Source of the DNA: Octopus sinensis | Lineage: Eukaryota | NCBI RefSeq assembly: GCF_006345805.1 | Contig: NC_043018.1 | Coordinates: 11,346,001 to 11,410,000, forward strand | Direction of reading: 5' to 3' | DNA: 64,000 bases | Shown: piece after piece, positions 41,640 to 58,258 of the stretch | How positions within the stretch are numbered: the first letter of the stretch is position 1 | Layout of the letters: each line of letters begins with the position of its first letter | Program-made: the position numbers and the translations under genes | The notes under the pieces: generated by a model | What the model saw: the letters and a program-made list of their open reading frames with translations, nothing else | Databases searched by the model: none | What the model was told of the DNA's origin: nothing

Positions 41640-43335
41640 TGAAGACAATCGAGTTTAATAAATCACACTTTATGTACACAACAACATAAAGGAAGCAGTT
41701 TGAACTAGTAACCTTCTTCACTGCCCTAAACTATTAATAATAATTAGCAATGGTTTGGAAGTTCATGTAGAAAGATGACGGTGGCCAGTGTTTTGTATTC
41801 CTAGTTCTGTCTTCTTTTATTCTTGGCAAGACTTGAGACAATAAGGTTTATATATAATCATTTCTTACATTATTTGCTTAAAAGGTTGTATGGCTTAGAG
41901 TTAAGAGCCTTGCTCAAGGGCCAACAGCACAGTGACTGGAGTCCAACATGTAAAGAGTGAAAGATGTTTGATATATCTCAGCCATAAGCTACTATCACAT
42001 AAATAACAAACAAAACACTTGAGATCTTGGCTCAGTGATTTTTATACAGAAATTAGCCTTGTCAATGTATTTAATATTCAATGGAGTGGGTCAGAAAGGT
42101 TGTTTTTTTCTTTCTTGCATTAAATAAAACCTTATTGCTCAAAAACAGGCAGTCTTGTGCCAAGGTCTTTTTTTTCCCCTTGTTTCCTAGACAAAAGAGC
42201 AAATCCTGTCTTATTGATAATTTCCTATAAACCTACAATATAGAAAGCTAGCCCCTGAACTTTCAGCTAAATCCTGCCTAGAAGGGGGTGGGGGTGGAAT
42301 ACATTATTATGTAAGCAAAGGAAACTAGTACATACTGCTAAATTAAGATTATCACTTTTAACATTAAGAAAAACATTCAGAGAGAAAACATAATGCAAGC
42401 CGTAACAAAATGGAGTGATTGACAATTACAAGTTAAAGAAAAAAACCCAAAATTGCAGAATAATTGAAATGTTTACCAAACAATAAATTTACAGCAAGCA
42501 AGTTTTACACAAGCAGTTGCAATGTGTCAGTGACCAGGTTATAAAAAAAAAAGAGAGAGAAAAAAAGAAGAAGAAACAAAAAAACGTTTTTTTGTTAGTT
42601 AATAAATTGACTAATTAATGCTATTTAAATTTTTACTGGTCTGCAAACCACAGACAAAGGAATAGATAAAAGGGAGAAGTAGGAAATAAAAAAAGAATGG
42701 GGGGGGGAACTAAAATTTGGGCCCCAACTTTATGATACGTCTTTAACTAAACAGAATAAAAAATGAAACTGAAAAAGAGAAAAAAGACCCAAAACTGAAC
42801 AATGAAAGGATAAAGCTACAGATAATAGCTACAGGTGAAAAATTAACTAATTTCTCTTGAAATAAAGAAATGGAACATAAATATTAAAAAAAAAAATATA
42901 TAAACTATTCCATGGTGAATGGTGTCCCCGTTCCCTTATTCCTTATGCAGTGTTTGCAGAATATATTTAAAAAATACACAAAGGGCAAGAAGCAATTACG
43001 CATGATCAATGAACGGTGTAACAGCAGTGAAAGCTGTGCTCAAGAACTGGTCCCCCAATCATATTACCAGCATAGGGGAGTGTGTAGGGATTTTAGGGAT
43101 CATGGGATTAGTCTCTGCAAGAAGAACAATGTCAAGACGGACCTCATTGAGTGGGGTGGGGTCGGGAAGGGTAGCGGAAGAGTTCAATTTCTTTTTATAT
43201 ATATTTCTGTTTAGTTTGTTTACACTGTTTTAATCTAATACTGGTATTCAGCCCCCGTTTTTTCTTTTTTGTTTGTTAGTTGTTGTTTTTTTTTTCATTT
43301 TGTTTAGTTTACTGGTGAAGAGACGAACAACTCGA
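41640..43335 (-). other. TOLLIP: Probable TOLLIP 3' UTR (about 1.7 kb), candidate ATTAAA poly(A) signal at 41659-41654
   Basis: Nearly repeat-free, U-rich sequence on the minus strand after the stop; ATTAAA is followed by a U/CU-rich downstream element. The end point is a guess. Confidence 0.4.
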
Positions 43336-43541
43336 TTATTGTTCGGAACTCATTGAGAGCAGTGAATTAATGACCGCATTTTTGTTGCCTCGTTGCGCAA
43401 TGAAAACTGACTGAATGACATTGGTTTCAATTCCTGGGAACATATCCTTCATTTGTTGAACATCAGATTCTGTGTATGCTGGAGCTTGTTGTACAGGGGC
43501 TGGAGGCAGCTGGGTAGTTTGATACACTGGAGTGCCACCAA
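43336..43541 (-). CDS. TOLLIP: TOLLIP terminal coding exon with CUE ubiquitin-binding domain: ...YTESDVQQMKDMFPGIETNVIQSVFIAQRGNKNAVINSLLSMSSEQ*
   Basis: CUE MFP motif and C-terminal LL. Acceptor ttttcctgtctctgttgcag|, phase 1; TAA at 43338-43336. Confidence 0.96.
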
Positions 43542-48485: not shown

Positions 48486-48591
48486 CTACAGGCTGCATGG
48501 GAGCGTAAAACATTCCAGGGCTGACAACTTGTGGGATTACCATAGTTTGTTGGGGACAAATAAAGCTTCCCATTGTAAGGTTTTGGACAGG
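48486..48591 (-). CDS. TOLLIP: TOLLIP linker exon: PVQNLTMGSFICPQQTMVIPQVVSPGMFYAPMQPV(V)
   Basis: P/Q/M/V-rich linker like Tollip exon 5. Boundaries cattcacag| and G|gtaagt; 106 nt, phase 0/1 fits both the upstream C2 exon and the CUE exon. Confidence 0.85.
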
Positions 48592-49044: not shown

Positions 49045-52000
49045 AAAAACACCATCCGAGCGTGGCCGTGCATACCTTCCTTCCTTCTTGTGAAGACCTG
49101 TGAAGACCTGTTGAGGCAAGTGAAAATCAAATCAAATCAAATCAAAACAAATCAAAATAGATGAACATCAATGGAATTTGTATCTTTGTGGTACCAGTGC
49201 CGGTGGCACACAAGAAAACCACCCGAACGTGGCCGTAGCCAGTACCGCATCAACTGGCCTCCGTGCTGTGGGCACGTAACAAACACCATCCGATCGTGGC
49301 CGTTCGCCAGCCTCATCTGGCACCTGTGTCGGTGGCACATAATAACACCATCCGAGCGTGGCCGTCTGGCACCTGTGTCGGTGGCACATAAAAAACACCA
49401 TCCGAGCGTGGCCGTTCGCCAGCCTCGTCTGGCACCTGTGTCGGTGGCACATAAAATCACCCACTACACTCTCGGAGTGGTTGGCGTTAGGAAGGGCATC
49501 CAGCTGTAGAAACACTGCCAGATCTGACTGGCCTGGTGTAGCCTTCGGGCTCCCCAGACCCCAGTTGAACCGTCCAACCCATGCTAGCATGGAAAACGGA
49601 TGATGATGAATGATGATATTTCGTTTTTGGATTTGGTTTGCAAGATTCTTTATGTGAGTTCCTGTGTTGAAGCACATTCTGTTGTCTGGGGAGAGTCATT
49701 CTCTTTTAGTGCCTTATAATTTAACACACTCACTGGTAAAATTTCCACTCATTTCCTTTATTTTTCTAAAATTTTCATTGCACCTTGCAACCTTGTCAAT
49801 AGTTTTGAGAGTCATTATAAGAACCCTACAGTTTTGTTTTTGGATAAATATTAACCAGCCCTATTTATGATATCATAAGTGCTCTTTCTAGACATATTGG
49901 TAATTTCTTGTCTTATCTTAGTGCAAACTTCATTTCACTACTTTTCAAACATCCTGGTCCCCGCTTTATATAGAAATAACCTGTAAATATTTCCCTAGAC
50001 CACTGCGAGATCACTCTTTTGTCTATTGACTTCAAAGCTCTATGCAGGACGATGGTATGACTAATATATTAAGTCTCCTGCCCTCTTCTCGAGGCCATGT
50101 TCTTACCTATTCCCTCCGTTTATTTTATTTTATGCATTTGTATTCACTCTGATGAAGTTCCATGTACTAGATCGAATGTCCTTTAAAGATGAATACTATT
50201 AGCACCGACTGGCACTGGACGCAGATATGGCCATAAGAAATGTTTATGTTATGTTTTGTATTAAAAAATAATCTACAGATGTAGTCCAATTTGTTTGTTT
50301 GTTGATCAAAAGTTTTCTCCATTTTCTGATTATTTAAATTATTTACACACACACACACAAGCAGGTCTTATATTCCTGTCTCATGACTTTCATCTCTTCA
50401 TCTCCTGTGTTCCTGCTTCAAGGCTTTCGCTCTACACATGCCAGCGCAACTTGATTCATCTTTATTAGTTGAAAGACATCTGTTGTTATTTTCTCCTTGT
50501 TTGTAATTGTACAACATTTTTTCTGGTTTTTTTTTTGGTTTTTTTGCCTTTGTTGTCGTACACATTCACTTGCTTTCTCCCTAAATATTTAATGTTCTTA
50601 GCTTAGATAGTGGGGGCCAGCCAAATTTGAACAGTCTCAAGTGTAACTGGCCGAAACTGTAAGGATAAGCTGGAAACTTGACTGAAGAGAGAAAGCTGCG
50701 AATGACCCGGCCTTATTTTTCCTGTCTGTCTTTGTATCGTCTATCTGTCCAGATGTTTTATCGTCGTCTGTCACAGATATTTTGAAGTAACTTTTTTTCT
50801 ACTGAACCAAATCTCAAACTATTTATGCCAAAGTGTAGCTGAGGAGGTGTCCTCTTTAAAACTGTTAACAGTTTGCAATTTAGTTGAGAACTGAATTAGT
50901 GGTGAAGCTTGGATGCTGCTGCGATTGACGAAATGGTGGACTTAAGAATACATTCAACCACTACCGTGGTTGAACGATTATATAACATGGAGTGAAATTA
51001 AATGAGAGAGACAAAAAATATATAAACAGTTGCCGAACATGGCAGAGGTGAAGATTTTTTTCTTTTCTTTTTTACAGGAACACACTATATTGAGGGCAGA
51101 GATTCTGAATCTGCAAAAAATTCTGCATTTCAAAATTTAAATCACCCACCTAAATTTCTTAAATTTTCACTGTTTATTAAAGATTTTTTTTTTTTTGGCG
51201 AAATACATAGAAAAATATGGAGATTACGATTCTGAAAAAAAAAAATTCTGTAAAATTTCAATTTTTCAAAAACAAATAAAAAAACAACTCCCATTCCCTC
51301 CGCCCTATGGCGAAGTGAAATTAATTTCACTTCTTGTCAAAGGGCGTGCCGTTCAAACCGAAAAGATCCAAATTCTGAAATGCAGATTTTTTTGCGGATT
51401 CGGAATCTCCGCCCTCGATACAGTGTGTTCCTTTAAAAATACCCCCTTCCCCAATCCCAAGGTGGGTGCGGTCCATGATCTTTACCTCCGCCCCAAGCTT
51501 TTCGATTTGCGAACAGACAACAAAATAATACAAACTAGACGGACGTTTGTTAATAAAGAGCAATGACTAAAAGTCATCGCTAAAATGAAACTCGCAATTT
51601 TATGTTAATATAGTAGTTCAGTTCGGGGAAAATCTGAAAGGTGAATTAGCCCCATGCATTTATTTTTTCCCCCCTAGTTGTTTCACGAGTCGAACAAATT
51701 GCTTAAATGCATTCCTTCTGGGTTTACATTCTGAGTTCAAAGACTGCCGAGGTCAACTTTGCCTTTCATTCTTTCGATGTTCACCCACACAACCTTCCCT
51801 CACGACATGGATAAAGAGGGTGGGCTGTAAAAGAGGGTGGATGACGTCTCAAACCGACACTCTTCCTAATGCTGTGTGCCTCTACTATAAAAGTAGGAGT
51901 TAAAGTGGGTCGATCAACGAGGATTATCAGCGCGCTCACGCACACCATTTGACTCATAAATCAACTTTCCTGTCGAAGTACCAATAAAAAATAAACAATC

Positions 52001-53134
52001 GCAAGCTATTTCCGTTTATGGATTAAAAAAAGAAATCAAACTCGTTTTGCAAAAAAAAAAAAAATCATATTTAAATTTCCTTTTCTTACGTCAGATACTT
52101 TCCACTTTAATTTTATTATCATACAAGCAGTAATCGCCCGGAGTTGCTCGGGTTTGTTTCGACCCTTTAGAATTGGAATTTTTGAAAAGTAAAAAGTTTA
52201 CATTATGTAGTTTGTTATTCTCTTTGAGTGAACATTTTTCTGGTTGAAATACACCAAAAAATGGCGTAAAAATAGGGATTTTAATAGAAAAAAGCACCTT
52301 TTTGATGTAAATAATTTTTGGTGTTAACATGGTCCGATTTGAATTTTTTCTTCTACGGGAGGAAGAGCAAGGCTTCTTCTATCATATTCTCAATTTTGGT
52401 CAACTTACGCCGCAGGGTCTCAGTGTTAATTGAAGGCTACCGACACCTGCCGCACACAGACAACTTCAGCTTTATAGAGAGAGAGAAGAGATTTCACTTC
52501 GATTCATCCTACACTTCCTTGATATCCGCCATTATATGTTCATATATCAAAAGATTAGGCCGTCTTTCGTTTTGATTTGCAGAAGTCATTTGGATCAACT
52601 GGTTGTTAGCCGATGATTATTTACTATCATTTGTTTTGTTTTTCTTCTTCGGTTTATGAGGAAGGGCTGTGGAAACGAAACCAAGACGACCTTTCAACAA
52701 GTTTCCAAAACGAGTAGGACGAAGTGGTAACGTTCACGAGTGAATTCCGCTGAAGGAACCCAAGGACCTTCCACAACAGTTTCCGTCTACCAAATTTCAC
52801 ACACGAAGTGATGGTCGACTCAAACACTGCCCAAAACTGGAATCGAACTCCAAACAACGTAGTTGCGCAAGTGAACGCGTTACTGCCTGCCACCTAGACT
52901 GTAAATAGGGCGAAGGGATAAAGACGATGGGAACCAAGAAGGCAAAGAGCCGGAACAAATACCACCAACTTATGGGATAAGTTCAAAGCCATAAAAAAAA
53001 AAAATGCCCATTAAACAGGCAAGAAACTCCGCAGTTAACAATATTATTTGACGATTAAAGAAATCTACCACCACCAACACCCTCTTCTACTTTATCGCCA
53101 TGTTGACAAAATAATAACAAACGAAAAACGATAC

Positions 53135-53245
53135 CTGGTTTGGGACATATTGGTAGACCCCTGATGGGGTAATCAATCGGCCGTTACTGGTTTGGACCGA
53201 ATATACTGAAACAGTGTTGGGATAGTGTTGCACGTAGGTTCTCAT
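53135..53245 (-). CDS. Candidate alternative first coding exon of TOLLIP: MRTYVQHYPNTVSVYSVQTSNGRLITPSGVYQYVPNQ (37 aa)
   Basis: ATG in aatcATGa context, open frame to CAG|GTATCG donor in phase 0, matching the phase-0 acceptor at 48591. See findings. Confidence 0.55.
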
Positions 53246-53364
53246 GATTAAAACCACTCGGAGCTGATCAGTTGGGACAACAACGACGATGGCGCGAGAC
53301 AGAAACCAAGTCAGACGAAGATAAAACAACAAAAATGACAAACGCAACCAACCTACAGAAAAGG

Positions 53365-53410
53365 AGTGTTACTAAGTAGAGATAGGAGGAGGAGAGATAT
53401 ATATAAATAG
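53365..53410 (-). promoter_or_regulatory. Candidate internal core promoter (TATA about -30, Inr TTAGT with +1 at 53373)
   Basis: TATATATA at 53405-53398 and TTAGT at 53375-53371 on the minus strand with canonical spacing; the region is visibly CpG-richer than its surroundings. Confidence 0.5.
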
Positions 53411-54219
53411 AAAGAGAGAGATAAATGAAAGGAAGGAGGGAGAGGAGAGACTATATCAGAATGATTGACAAAAATAAACAGGATTTAGTCAGGTGGACAT
53501 TTAGTCAGGTGGTGAGAGTAGAGAAGTGATAGGACACGTCCACACGCACCTATGCCAGAGACGACATCAAGCCGATTAGGTGACAGAGCTGTAGACGAGA
53601 GCAAGAGACACTTGTGTAACTTGACAACTGTTTGTCACCTTAAACCGACGGACTGCCCCTCCTGCCTCATCTCCACGAATCACTCAAGTGTATCCCCTAC
53701 TCCCCAAATTTATTAAATATTTATTTGCTGTTCAGGTACGTTTAGTCCTTTCGTAACAGACGTGAAACTTCTCAAAGCAGACAAACAGGAAGTGAAGTGA
53801 GAGTATGTGTGTGTGTGTGTATCGTCGGTAAATCCTAAATCCGAAAAAGAAGTTACAGAGCAGTATAGTATCTCTCTATACACACACACACACATATATA
53901 TACAAACACACACACACACATATATATACAAACACACACACACTAGTGAGTGGACAAATGAAACATTTAATAGGCGTTACATGTATGATTTAAAAGAATT
54001 GGATTCAGTTTCGTGCACATCCACAAACACACGATTAAGTTGTGTCAAAAGGTGAGATTTTCAATGTGAAATGATATTAAGAGATACGAACTAAGACAAA
54101 AAGAAACTGATGAAATACAATCAAGAAGCACAAACTCATGTGACCACCACCTGCCAATCCTTTTTATCTCAAATGTTATTATTCATTCTTTTTCTCTCTG
54201 CTACTTTATTTTAAATCAT

Positions 54220-56650: not shown

Positions 56651-56799
56651 AAGAGGGATGACCTGTAAGTGGACATCCATTATGCTAGAAGATCCGCTAT
56701 GGTCTTATCACTAAGAAAGGAATGTTCTCAAGAAAAGGACATTACACAGAATAATCTTCTTCTAGCATAATGGATGTCCACTTACAGGTCATCCCTCTT
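56651..56799. other. Perfect 42-bp inverted repeat (149-bp foldback/MITE-like) in TOLLIP intron 5
   Basis: 56651-56692 is the exact reverse complement of 56758-56799. Confidence 0.93.
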
Positions 56800-56979
56800 C
56801 ATCATCATCATCGTTTAACTTCCGCTTTCCATGCTAGCATGGGTTGGACGATTTTGACTGAGGGCTGGCAAACCAGATGGCTGCACCAGGCTCCAATCTT
56901 GATCTGGCAGAGTTTCTATAGCTGGATGCCCTTCCCTCTTATATGTATGTAATATAAATAAATGAATGTATATACTCAC

Positions 56980-57132
56980 TGTGAAAGATAAAACAAGATT
57001 AATCATGCCTTCCTTTTCTTCGCCTTGCCTTCCACTAAGAGGGTACCAGTCATCAACGACATCACCATTCAAGACAGACTGGGGTATTGTGACGTGACAC
57101 CATGCTATCCTATCATCAACAGTAAAAGATCT
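56980..57132 (-). CDS. TOLLIP: TOLLIP C2-domain exon: [51 protein letters not shown]
   Basis: Matches Tollip RAFSMDDRIAWTHITIP...[22 protein letters not shown]. Boundaries tttcag| and |gtgagt; 153 nt, phase 0/0. Confidence 0.97.
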
Positions 57133-58258
57133 CTGAAATAGATACAAAAAATAAAAAATAAATAAATGCAAAGTCTTCATTGTTGAGATTCAAATCCTAC
57201 AAACATGTTAATTATTGTTCTCAGTAAAACAGATTATCATTTTGACATTGAGTCTAAGCCATTTCACGCCAACCCACCCAAGACCACCTCTAGTTCGATA
57301 TGTAACTGCTTGTTTAAAAATATTCATATTTAAATTATAATTGTCTCATGAATTTATTGAAATTATGTTCTCCAAATCAAAATTGATAATTTTTTTTGAC
57401 AAAGGTACAAGGCTAGACAGAAGCCATGTGTGAAGGCACGTGGTTCAGTGGTTAGAGCATTGAGCTAACTACACTGAGGTCATGAGTTTGATCCCTGGAC
57501 TGGGCTGTGTGTTGTGTTCTCAAGCAAAGCACTTCATTTTCACATTGCTCCTGTTCACTCAGCTGTATTTTGATTCTGCTGCAACTGTCATGTGCCCATA
57601 GTTTGCACTGACCACACTATGGAATTTCTATCTGCATCTTGTCAACATATGGAACAGGGCTGTTCACTTGAAGGGATTAGGGTTCTGTCTGTTCTTCTGC
57701 TACTTAGAATTTTAGTCTTTACCAAGTTAACTTTAAGACCCTTGGAATTTTAATTTTAATTCTTCTACACTTTCAGTTATAATAACAAGGTCATCAGCAT
57801 AGGGGAGTTCTTATTGATAACTGATCTTAAATTCCTCTGTTATGGCCTGGAGGACTATGATGAATAAGAGGGGACTCATAACCGAACCCTTATGGATTCC
57901 TACCTGCACACTAAATTCACTGTTGTACTTGTTAACTCTCTCTTTGGTAAAGGTACCCTTGTACCTGCCTTGAATGGCTCTTACTAGCCAGTCATCTATT
58001 CCTAGCTTTCACATCAACCACCAGATGATTTCCAAATGTTGTGTGTGGAGAACTAGAAACAAATAGCACTGTCTACAAAAGGCTCATTCAGACAAAAGGT
58101 CACACAACATGGTAAGGCATATCAAGAAGCCCAGATTTATAGGTAAATGTGTGTGAAAAAATGTCAAACTTCCAAAAAGCAACCTGAACAGATGTGCACA
58201 ACTAATTACGCTAACACACTTATTTAGTATAGGAGAAAACAGGCCAACTAAAACTCAC

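What the first reader, a model, noticed from the sequence alone, without database searches (positions are those of the whole stretch)
53135..53410. Internal promoter and alternative first exon predicting a C2-less, CUE-only TOLLIP isoform
Seen: on the TOLLIP strand inside the 8.4-kb intron 5 there is TATATATA (53405-53398), then an Inr-like TTAGT whose A (53373) is about 30 nt downstream, then a 128-nt leader with no ATG. The first ATG (aatcATGa, 53245) opens a 37-codon frame ending at CAG|GTATCG in phase 0, the phase needed to join the linker exon (48591) and the CUE exon. About 51.3-53.9 kb visibly retains CpGs, even inside old SINE copies, unlike the rest of the gene body. Established: Tollip binds Tom1 through its N-terminus, phosphoinositides through C2 and ubiquitin through CUE; yeast Cue5 is a CUE-containing autophagy adaptor without C2. 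Inference: a 140-aa protein (37+35+1+67) keeping only CUE could be a membrane-uncoupled ubiquitin adaptor or a dominant-negative modulator of TLR/IL-1R signalling. YQYV fits the loose [WFY]xx[LIV] LIR core, but that motif has low specificity. Alternative reading: a symmetric 129-nt cassette exon from the acceptor ctgatcag| at 53263 (adds LRVVLI).
Basis: partly seen in the sequence, partly recalled or inferred. Interest (0 to 1): 0.82.

Follow-up and report, generated by a model that had tools for sequence, protein, structure and literature searches.

The report
Conserved hidden exon in octopus TOLLIP
Inside a long intron of the octopus TOLLIP immune-adaptor gene lies a short protein-coding segment with splice signals that is also preserved in the distantly related argonaut, so it is probably a real but unannotated alternative exon, although no transcript containing it has been seen and the proposed internal promoter remains unproven.

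Summary
The window is Octopus sinensis chromosome DNA and TOLLIP lies on the minus strand. The TATA/Inr/ATG-ORF/GT pattern alone is at chance level: intron 5 holds 23 comparable ORFs, TATATATA occurs 385 times per strand, and 262 GT sites score as well. All known octopod TOLLIP proteins and two RNA contigs join 56980 directly to 48591. None of the predicted isoforms is in the protein collections.

Two things are more than chance. (1) The ORF has an orthologue at the same relative position in intron 5 of Argonauta hians. It is 42 codons with a strong acceptor, a conserved ATG and the same CAG|GTAT phase-0 end. The similarity is frame-specific with a codon-position pattern of 0.54/0.86/0.32, which neutral simulations almost never give. 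(2) CpG o/e is 0.94 over 51.3-53.9 kb against 0.30 in the rest of the gene body, as at the main promoter. This block is absent in Argonauta.

Verdict: probably a real, old, weakly constrained alternative exon ("5b"). Within Octopus it evolves about neutrally, so it may be decaying. RNA evidence is needed.

The parts
53135..53263 (-). Candidate alternative exon '5b' of TOLLIP in the cassette reading: 129 nt, 43 codons, phase 0/0 (LRVVLIMRTYVQHYPNTVSVYSVQTSNGRLITPSGVYQYVPNQ)
   Evidence: Sequence read. Orthologue in Argonauta hians at L007 27905-28030 (126 nt). Reciprocal best hit. Frame-specific similarity. Codon-position identity 0.54/0.86/0.32. Neutral simulation.
53135..53245 (-). ATG-initiated reading of the same exon: 37 codons. 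The ATG is conserved in all four octopod genomes with A at -3.
   Evidence: This is the only reading intact in O. bimaculoides (36 codons).
53129..53134 (-). 5' splice site GTATCG after ...CAG. CAG|GTAT is conserved in O. vulgaris, O. bimaculoides (GTATTG) and Argonauta (GTATTT). It is a weak donor lacking +5 G.
   Evidence: Under neutral drift the full CAGGTAT 7-mer is retained in 2.2% of simulations.
53264..53290 (-). Acceptor-like AG (53265-53264) with a moderate pyrimidine tract (0.64) and an 87-nt AG-free zone. It is weaker than all five real TOLLIP acceptors.
   Evidence: It ranks in the top 8.5% of AG sites. The Argonauta counterpart ranks in the top 3.4%.
53373..53405 (-). TATATATA (53405-53398) and TTAGT (A at 53373), proposed as TATA box and initiator. 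They are present but not distinguishable from chance.
   Evidence: TATATATA occurs 385 times per strand. The spacing changes by a 3-nt indel in O. vulgaris.
51250..54200 (.). CpG-retaining block, inferred to be germline-hypomethylated: CpG o/e about 0.94, G+C unchanged. A weaker extension runs to about 48750. It is mostly unique sequence.
   Evidence: Slower CpG decay between O. sinensis and O. bimaculoides: 17/30 CpGs kept against 6/30 in intronic flanks, Fisher p=0.007. Same signature at the main promoter. Absent in Argonauta.
56980..57134 (-). TOLLIP exon 5 (end of the C2 domain, ...MINLVLSFT), phase-0 donor ACA|GTGAGT
48486..48591 (-). TOLLIP exon 6 (linker, PVQNLTMGSF...PMQPV), starts in phase 0. 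It is joined directly to exon 5 in all observed transcripts.
   Evidence: L001; L003.
42543..43541 (-). TOLLIP last exon (CUE domain; by my count of the coding length the CDS ends near 43336, not checked by a tool) plus 3' UTR as far as the transcript contig reaches
   Evidence: CUE Pfam hit.

Best explanation
The segment 53263-53135 is a genuine, evolutionarily old, unannotated alternative coding exon of TOLLIP ('exon 5b'). It splices through its weak CAG|GTAT donor to exon 6 in frame.

The usage I think most likely is as an internal cassette exon. It would be entered through its own AG acceptor from exon 5 and would insert 42-43 Tyr/Pro/Val/Gln-rich residues between the C2 domain and the existing linker. 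That lengthens the tether between the membrane-binding and ubiquitin-binding modules. Inclusion must be rare or restricted to particular tissues or stages. The exon appears to be under relaxed constraint, and possibly decaying, in the genus Octopus.

Shown: the sequence features; orthology with Argonauta; the coding-type substitution pattern; and the absence of the exon from all known transcripts. Inferred: that it is spliced at all; that it is entered from exon 5; and any effect on the protein.

The adjacent CpG-retaining block is a real Octopus-genus feature. Its link to the exon is not established.
For: Orthologue in Argonauta hians intron 5, on the same strand and at the same fractional position (0.44 vs 0.45), with 126 nt of open frame between a pyrimidine-rich AG and CAG|GTATTT.

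Smith-Waterman score 59 against a shuffled null of 37.4 +/- 4.2 (maximum 52 of 300). It is a reciprocal best hit in the whole 64-kb window, 59 vs next best 43. It is the best non-repeat match of 253 intronic open segments.

The similarity exists only in the ORF frame: 59 against 17-30 for the other frame pairs. Codon-position identity is 0.54/0.86/0.32, and 9 of 15 identical residues use different codons.

Neutral drift at the calibrated silent-site distance (d about 0.62) gives the joint result of score, open frame, ATG and GT in 0.3% of runs. It gives the codon-position pattern in 1e-4 of the runs that reach the score.

Support for cassette use: exon lengths of 129 and 126 nt, both phase 0/0 and stop-free. 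The Argonauta acceptor is in the top 3.4% of AG sites and the O. sinensis one in the top 8.5%. A Leu two codons upstream of the ATG is conserved through two synonymous changes, TTA vs CTG. Linker-insert isoforms exist in RefSeq models of another lophotrochozoan, Lineus.
Against: No transcript evidence. RefSeq X1 and X2, the cloned O. vulgaris cDNA, the O. bimaculoides and Argonauta models and two Logan RNA contigs all join exon 5 directly to exon 6. The ORF shares no words with any of 5.8 billion clustered proteins. The predicted isoforms are absent from the 15-billion-sequence collection.

In O. bimaculoides a 1-nt deletion between the acceptor and the ATG makes the cassette 125 nt long with immediate stops.

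Between O. sinensis and O. bimaculoides the exon differs at 15 of 108 nt. That is above the local intron rate (8.9%) and far above the canonical exons (0.7%). Codon changes are 7 nonsynonymous to 3 synonymous.

The O. sinensis acceptor is weaker than all five real acceptors. No other lophotrochozoan TOLLIP has an insert at this junction.
Confidence: 0.4

Rival explanations
1. Exon 5b is the first coding exon of a transcript that starts inside intron 5, either directly at a TSS near 53373 or after a short non-coding leader exon spliced to the 53263 acceptor. Translation starts at the conserved ATG (53245). The product is a 140-aa protein without the TBD or C2 domain, consisting of the linker plus CUE. 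It would bind ubiquitin without binding Tom1 or phosphoinositides.
For: The ATG, with A at -3, is conserved in all four genomes. The ATG-initiated frame is the only reading intact in O. bimaculoides. Protein-level similarity with Argonauta begins only two codons before the ATG. Argonauta has an in-frame TAG immediately upstream. No ATG occurs within 240 nt or more upstream in any genome.

The exon lies about 0.8-0.9 kb inside the 5' edge of a CpG-retaining block whose o/e of about 1 and geometry match the main promoter zone. Octopus genes of this expression class have unmethylated TSSs and methylated bodies (PMC9476566).

The 140-aa product retains an intact CUE domain, Pfam E=2e-9.
Against: The TATA and Inr motifs are at chance level, and their spacing is not fixed. 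The lack of upstream ATGs is explained by pyrimidine-rich or microsatellite composition. There is no CpG block around the Argonauta exon, only 0-4 CpG per 500 bp.

A true first exon needs no acceptor, yet acceptor-like, in-frame AGs precede the ORF in both Argonauta and O. sinensis. No 140-aa, 139-aa or 144-aa product is on record. The 97-aa Logan ORF that looked like a 5' variant turned out to be a chimeric contig carrying the canonical exon 5/6 junction. The YQYV LIR-like motif is not conserved.
Confidence: 0.25
2. Relic exon. Exon 5b was a functional alternative exon in the octopod ancestor, and perhaps still is in Argonauta. It is no longer used in the genus Octopus, where it drifts neutrally and merely has not yet acquired a stop codon.
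For: Within Octopus the exon evolves at or above the neutral rate: 13.9% against 8.9% local intron divergence and 4.3% at four-fold sites. Codon changes are 7 nonsynonymous to 3 synonymous, spread 5/3/6 over codon positions. There is a frameshift upstream of the ATG in O. bimaculoides. The Octopus acceptors are weaker than the Argonauta one. No transcript contains the exon although TOLLIP is abundantly expressed (PMC10230085).
Against: The ATG, open frame and donor are intact in all three Octopus genomes. The counts are small: omega of 0.3 or less is disfavoured at about p=0.01 by my own Poisson estimate (no tool call), but omega of about 0.5 is compatible. Some of the changes are at hypermutable CpGs. 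Polarising the changes with Argonauta as outgroup shows no one-sided decay.
Confidence: 0.2
3. The segment was never an exon. It is an ordinary chance ORF in intronic DNA. The Argonauta match is either residual similarity of neutral orthologous sequence or a conserved non-coding element.
For: ORFs of this kind are common, with 23 in intron 5 alone. Neutral drift without indels at d about 0.62 reaches the observed protein score in 25% of simulations. Raw DNA identity of the aligned part (57%) equals the identity at four-fold sites (58%). DNA-level similarity of the exon is no better than that of its flanks.
Against: Under neutrality, joint retention of score, open frame, ATG and GT has probability about 0.003. 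Frame specificity occurs in 0.7% of runs. The codon-position pattern occurs in 1e-4 of runs. All indels between species within the ORF are multiples of 3. The rest of intron 5 is unalignable except for repeats. A non-coding element would not show 86% identity at second positions against 32% at third positions.
Confidence: 0.1

Closest known systems
Mammalian TOLLIP splice isoforms A-D (B lacks the TBD through exon-2 skipping, C lacks C2 through exon-3 skipping, D uses an alternative exon; summarised in PMC8086045)
   Same: It is the same gene family, and the principle is the same: alternative splicing changes which of the TBD, C2 and CUE modules are present or how they are connected. The O. 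vulgaris models P0122 and P0004 also skip exon 2, like human isoform B.
   Different: The mammalian variants arise by skipping constitutive exons. Here an extra exon lies hidden in the intron between the C2 and linker exons. A TBD-less, C2-less CUE-only product from an internal start is not among the isoforms that review lists. I did not compare human isoform D's alternative exon with exon 5b.
Linker-insert isoforms of TOLLIP in Lineus longissimus (RefSeq X2-X8, 287-342 aa)
   Same: Optional in-frame segments lengthen the Pro/Gln/Val-rich linker between C2 and CUE.
   Different: The inserts lie at the next exon junction downstream, equivalent to octopus exon 6/7. They show no sequence similarity to exon 5b and are annotated from transcript evidence.
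Yeast Cue5, a CUE-domain ubiquitin-Atg8 autophagy adaptor without C2
   Same: The hypothetical 140-aa product would likewise be a CUE protein without a membrane-binding C2 domain.
   Different: Cue5 function depends on an Atg8-interacting motif. The only LIR-like motif in exon 5b (YQYV) is absent from the Argonauta orthologue. No expression of the product has been shown.
Unmethylated TSS regions of methylated-body genes in Octopus bimaculoides (pattern MP2, PMC9476566)
   Same: The intron-5 block has the CpG o/e (about 1) and the size of the unmethylated zone around TOLLIP exon 1.
   Different: The block lies inside the gene body and is inferred from CpG content and decay only. It shows no sequence constraint, having the highest non-CpG divergence of all segments. 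It is absent in Argonauta.

Membership tests
TOLLIP gene (TBD-C2-CUE adaptor) | C2 domain followed by a linker and a C-terminal CUE domain, orthologous to annotated Tollip | tested here: met
   The window is 100% identical to the O. sinensis TOLLIP locus. The protein equals XP_029649349.1. Pfam C2 and CUE hits.
Alternative cassette exon | AG acceptor and GT donor on the gene strand, length divisible by 3, no in-frame stop, phases matching the flanking exons | tested here: inconclusive
   Met in O. sinensis and O. vulgaris (129 nt) and in Argonauta (126 nt). Not met in O. bimaculoides (125 nt, stops in frame).
Alternative cassette exon | Spliced reads joining exon 5 to the exon, and the exon to exon 6 | not testable with these tools
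   No read-level RNA-seq access. The assembled transcripts and annotated isoforms available all skip it.
Protein-coding exon under purifying selection | Cross-species conservation stronger at the protein level than the DNA level, frame-specific, with third positions free to vary and indels in multiples of 3 | tested here: met
   Octopus against Argonauta. Caveat: this is not met over the short O. sinensis to O. bimaculoides distance, where change is about neutral.
Alternative promoter / first exon | Core promoter motifs (TATA, Inr) at the correct spacing and beyond chance | tested here: not met
   The motifs are present but ubiquitous: TATATATA 385 times per strand. The Inr match is imperfect. 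Spacing varies between O. sinensis and O. vulgaris. In Argonauta only a (TA)n microsatellite lies upstream.
Alternative promoter / first exon | Unmethylated, CpG-retaining region around the TSS | tested here: inconclusive
   Met in O. sinensis, O. vulgaris and the readable parts of O. bimaculoides. Not met in Argonauta. Methylation itself was not measured.
Alternative promoter / first exon | Mapped transcription start (CAGE, 5'RACE, capped reads) | not testable with these tools
   No such data are accessible here.
CUE-only autophagy adaptor (Cue5-like) | CUE domain plus a conserved Atg8/LC3-interacting motif | tested here: not met
   CUE would be retained. YQYV (O. sinensis) and YHYV (O. bimaculoides) have no counterpart in Argonauta, which reads AYPPYAQ there.

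The most novel reading that the evidence does not exclude
Octopods have kept, since before the Octopus-Argonauta split, an internally initiated TOLLIP transcript. Its first coding exon (5b) supplies a conserved start codon and about 37-40 residues, and is spliced to the linker and CUE exons. The product is a soluble CUE-only Tollip that cannot bind Tom1 or phosphoinositides. In Octopus it would be driven from a germline-hypomethylated intragenic promoter island. Such a protein could act as a membrane-uncoupled ubiquitin adaptor or as a dominant-negative modulator of TLR/IL-1R-type signalling.
Probability: 0.25. Interest if true: 0.6.

Novelty: new variant of a known kind. Interest (0 to 1): 0.42.

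Why it matters
TOLLIP is a conserved adaptor that links ubiquitin, endosomal membranes and innate immune signalling, and its isoforms are little studied even in mammals. An extra exon conserved across octopods but missing from every annotation would mean cephalopod TOLLIP makes a product not yet described. That product would have either a longer C2-CUE tether or a CUE-only protein. It also shows that cephalopod gene models still miss conserved alternative exons.

The neighbouring CpG-retaining block is a clear example of an intragenic, apparently unmethylated island inside a methylated invertebrate gene body. It can be tested directly against the bisulfite data already published for O. bimaculoides. 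If the exon proves unused, the case is still a useful caution. The promoter-plus-ORF pattern is at chance level in this genome, and only the cross-species test separates this ORF from the 22 others in the same intron.

Tried and rejected
Rejected: all octopod and decapod proteins and the mRNA contig read SFT|PVQ.

(2) Homology to linker inserts of other lophotrochozoan TOLLIPs. None of 22 aligned sequences has an insert at this junction.

(3) Logan ORF P0129 (97 aa) as evidence for an alternative 5' exon spliced to exon 6. Rejected: contig L003 is a chimera whose TOLLIP part begins with the last 18 nt of exon 5.

(4) Exon 5b as a diverged duplicate of exon 6. No similarity (p=0.73 and 0.93).

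(5) Repeat or transposon origin of the exon. There are no other copies in the window or in the fetched loci, and no Pfam domain.

(6) The CpG block as a young insertion. Rejected, because it is orthologous in O. bimaculoides and contains an exon that is orthologous in Argonauta.

(7) A nested gene or structured RNA in the block. There are no convincing ORFs, no tRNA and only sub-threshold Rfam hits on microsatellite or SINE hairpins.

(8) CpG decay between O. sinensis and O. vulgaris. The divergence of 0.5% is too small (6/104 vs 13/125, p=0.24).

(9) A profile search of the three octopod exon-5b peptides joined to exon 6 returned nothing. It also failed to recover canonical TOLLIPs, so I do not count it as a negative.

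(10) The look-up of the cuttlefish locus failed, so no decapod intron could be examined.

Full report
**What the window is.** The window is 100% identical over the 16-kb stretch compared (window 58500-42500) to Octopus sinensis chromosome CM016880.1. TOLLIP lies on the minus strand. A 1863-nt RNA-derived contig (L001) maps as exons 62582-62409, 60216-60080, 58308-58259, 57134-56980, 48591-48486 and 43546-42543. The first coding exon (MSTDRRSQ) lies beyond the end of the window. The intron between them is 8388 nt.

**Observation.** Every literal feature is at the stated coordinates:
- TATATATA at 53405-53398.
- TTAGT with its A at 53373.
- An ATG-free leader. In fact there is no ATG for 255 nt upstream.
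- ATG at 53245, followed by 37 codons ending CAG|GTATCG after 53135.
- An upstream ctgatcag| acceptor that gives a 129-nt phase 0/0 exon.

As a pattern this is not above background. TATATATA occurs 385 times on each strand. Intron 5 alone has 23 distinct ATGs that open frames of 30 or more codons ending at a phase-0 GT. On this strand, 262 GT sites score at least as well as the candidate donor. The acceptor is weaker than all five real TOLLIP acceptors.

**Transcripts and annotation.** No known product contains the segment. The following all read ...LVLSFT|PVQNL...:
- RefSeq O. sinensis X1 and X2.
- The cloned O. vulgaris cDNA.
- The O. vulgaris, O. bimaculoides and Argonauta hians genome models.
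- Two decapod transcript proteins.
- Two independent RNA contigs (L001, and L003, which is chimeric at its 5' end).

The 86-aa ORF shares no set of three 5-residue words with any of 5.8 billion clustered proteins. Seven predicted products, covering both models in three species, are absent from the 15-billion-sequence collection. None of 22 aligned lophotrochozoan TOLLIPs has an insert at this junction. The Lineus isoforms insert at the next junction downstream. These negatives are real but limited. Only a handful of octopus RNA assemblies are represented, and assemblies favour the dominant isoform.

**Close relatives.** O. vulgaris (L002) differs by about 0.5% in substitutions, and the ORF carries one synonymous change. 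This is uninformative.

O. bimaculoides (L006) aligns collinearly through intron 5. There the ATG, a 36-codon open frame (after a 3-nt deletion) and CAG|GTATTG are retained. However:
- Codon changes are 7 nonsynonymous to 3 synonymous.
- Differences fall 5/3/6 on the three codon positions.
- Identity (86%) is no higher than in the flanks (86-91%).
- A 1-nt deletion between the acceptor and the ATG makes the cassette reading 125 nt long with immediate stops.

**The Argonauta result.** The hit lies in intron 5 of Argonauta hians, on the TOLLIP strand, at the same fractional position as in O. sinensis (0.45 vs 0.44). The sequence reads ccacctccacccaatag|CTG ACC ATG AGG ... GCT CAG|gtatttt. That is 126 nt, or 42 codons, with an ATG at codon 3, an in-frame TAG immediately upstream, and the same CAG|GTAT phase-0 end.

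- The Smith-Waterman score is 59, against 37.4 +/- 4.2 (maximum 52) for 300 shuffled peptides.
- It is the reciprocal best hit in the entire window (59 vs next best 43).
- Of 253 intronic open segments it is the best that is not a translated microsatellite, low-complexity tract or SINE.
- Similarity exists only in the ORF frame: 59, against 17-30 for the other eight frame pairs. DNA-level similarity is not significant.
- Across 28 aligned codons, identity is 0.54, 0.86 and 0.32 at positions 1, 2 and 3. Nine of 15 identical residues use different codons.

**Is that more than neutral orthology?** I calibrated silent divergence on the canonical exons. O. sinensis and Argonauta are 58% identical at four-fold sites (d about 0.62). 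O. sinensis and O. bimaculoides differ at 4 of 93 such sites (d about 0.044).

Simulating neutral drift of the exon at the Argonauta distance, without indels, gives a score of 59 or more in 25% of runs. So similarity alone does not prove selection. The other features do discriminate:
- Score, open frame, retained ATG and retained GT occur together in 0.3% of runs.
- Frame specificity occurs in 0.7% of runs.
- Among runs that reach the score, the expected codon-position identities are 0.62/0.64/0.59. The observed contrast (position 2 at 0.86 or more with position 3 at 0.32 or less) occurs in 1e-4.

In addition, all within-ORF indels between species are multiples of three. I conclude that the frame was under purifying selection for most of the time since the two lineages split.

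The same calibration shows a tension. Within Octopus the exon changes at 13.9%. That is above the local intron rate (8.9% non-CpG) and far above the canonical exons (0.7%). So constraint is weak or recently relaxed.

**The CpG block.** CpG o/e is 0.94 over 51.3-53.9 kb and 0.30 in the rest of the gene body, with unchanged G+C. At 250-bp resolution the plateau runs from about 54.0 to 51.25 kb, with a weaker extension to about 48.75 kb. That extension includes a CpG-rich repeat at 49.1-49.6 kb.

The main promoter zone around exon 1 has the same signature. The readable parts of the orthologous O. bimaculoides intron are also elevated. CpGs have decayed more slowly in the block than in purely intronic flanks: 17/30 kept against 6/30, Fisher p=0.007. 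That partition was chosen after seeing the data.

This fits the published octopus methylome, in which constitutively expressed genes have methylated bodies and unmethylated TSSs (PMC9476566). Tollip is abundantly and broadly expressed in O. vulgaris (PMC10230085).

Three points count against a tight link to the exon. The block shows no sequence constraint, having the highest non-CpG divergence of all segments. The Argonauta exon sits in CpG-poor DNA.

**Cassette exon or first exon?**

For the cassette:
- In-frame, stop-free exons of 129 and 126 nt.
- An Argonauta acceptor in the top 3.4% of AG sites, and an O. sinensis acceptor in the top 8.5%.
- A Leu conserved through synonymous changes upstream of the ATG.
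- Cassette exons are more common than internal coding first exons (my own prior, not tested here).
- Linker-insert isoforms exist in Lineus.

For the ATG-initiated CUE-only form:
- The ATG with A at -3 is conserved in all four genomes.
- It is the only reading intact in O. bimaculoides.
- Similarity starts just before the ATG.
- The CpG block is present in Octopus.

A hybrid would reconcile most of these observations: an internal promoter, a short non-coding exon, then the acceptor and the ATG. It needs an exon that has not been observed.

My estimates are cassette about 0.4, ATG-initiated about 0.25, relic no longer used in Octopus about 0.2, and never an exon about 0.1.

**Comparison with what is known.** Mammalian TOLLIP has isoforms lacking the TBD (B) or C2 (C), and one using an alternative exon (D) (PMC8086045). 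The O. vulgaris models that skip exon 2 mirror isoform B. An extra exon between the C2 and linker exons, or an internally initiated CUE-only product, would be a new variant of this known theme. The Cue5 analogy fails its motif test, because the YQYV LIR-like motif is not conserved in Argonauta. The peptide matches no Pfam family, and the 140-aa product would keep an intact CUE domain.

**Verdict.** It is most likely a real, ancient, weakly constrained and unannotated alternative exon of octopod TOLLIP, lying next to a real Octopus-specific CpG-retaining island. How the exon is used, and whether it is still used, must be settled with RNA data. Interest is moderate.

Noticed in passing
window 49096-49619: A G+C- and CpG-rich element (19 CpG in 250 bp, GC 0.59) built of tandem subunits of about 112 nt containing AAAAACACCATCCGAGCGTGGCCGT. 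Related copies lie at about 30450-30805, 10160-10361, 23156-23419 and 56804-56935, and in the Argonauta TOLLIP locus. It looks like an old interspersed (SINE-like) repeat family shared across octopods. It accounts for the local CpG peak at 49.25-49.5 kb.
   Followed up: partly
window 51069-51439: Inverted repeat with 75-nt arms (87% complementary) separated by 221 nt. It is MITE-like or could form a long hairpin, and it is present at the orthologous place in O. vulgaris.
   Followed up: no
window 24000-31000 and 33000-38000: Further zones with CpG o/e of 0.6-1.2, downstream of TOLLIP. They are presumably unmethylated intergenic or promoter DNA of neighbouring genes. The O. vulgaris annotation has a 173-aa gene at L002 51536-52158, roughly window 34.2-34.8 kb by my estimate. 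In contrast, 1-23 kb is CpG-depleted like a methylated gene body.
   Followed up: no
L002 (O. vulgaris OX597835.1), proteins P0004 and P0122: Two O. vulgaris gene models skip exon 2 (MSTDRRSQ|AQLTKNYG) and so lack the Tom1-binding region, like human isoform B. P0004 also replaces the end of the CUE domain with an unrelated tail and has no Pfam CUE hit. This could be real isoforms or annotation artefacts.
   Followed up: no
L003 (Logan SRR16213285 contig, 1270 nt): Chimeric assembly. Positions 1-528 carry an unrelated ORF in antisense. Positions 529-1270 are TOLLIP, from the last 18 nt of exon 5 onward.
   Followed up: yes
L006 (O. bimaculoides CM046622.1) about 8000-11000 and 16000-18000: Runs of N interrupt intron 5 and another intron, so about 4 kb orthologous to window 52.9-48.9 kb could not be compared. 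The RefSeq model XP_014777447.2 (206 aa) starts at an internal Met and is 5'-truncated.
   Followed up: no
window 56661-56789 and 53802-53898: Sub-threshold Rfam hits: MIR6024 at 31.8 bits (gathering threshold 72), and mir-466 at about 27 bits on both strands. They fall next to or on SINE and (CA)n/(TG)n palindromic sequence, so they are chance hairpins rather than miRNA genes.
   Followed up: partly
alignment A1, columns about 380-442 (Lineus longissimus P0045-P0051): RefSeq isoforms of nemertean TOLLIP (287-342 aa) differ by combinations of optional segments within the C2-CUE linker, at the junction equivalent to octopus exon 6/7. Linker-length variation by cassette exons may be a recurrent feature of lophotrochozoan TOLLIP.
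   Followed up: no
protein P0005 (Acanthosepion pharaonis TOLLIP, 199 aa): The cuttlefish gene model reads through the exon-5 donor into the intron (…LVLTFT VSAAILHML…) and stops, so it lacks the linker and CUE. It is a truncated annotation. Its locus could not be fetched.
   Followed up: no
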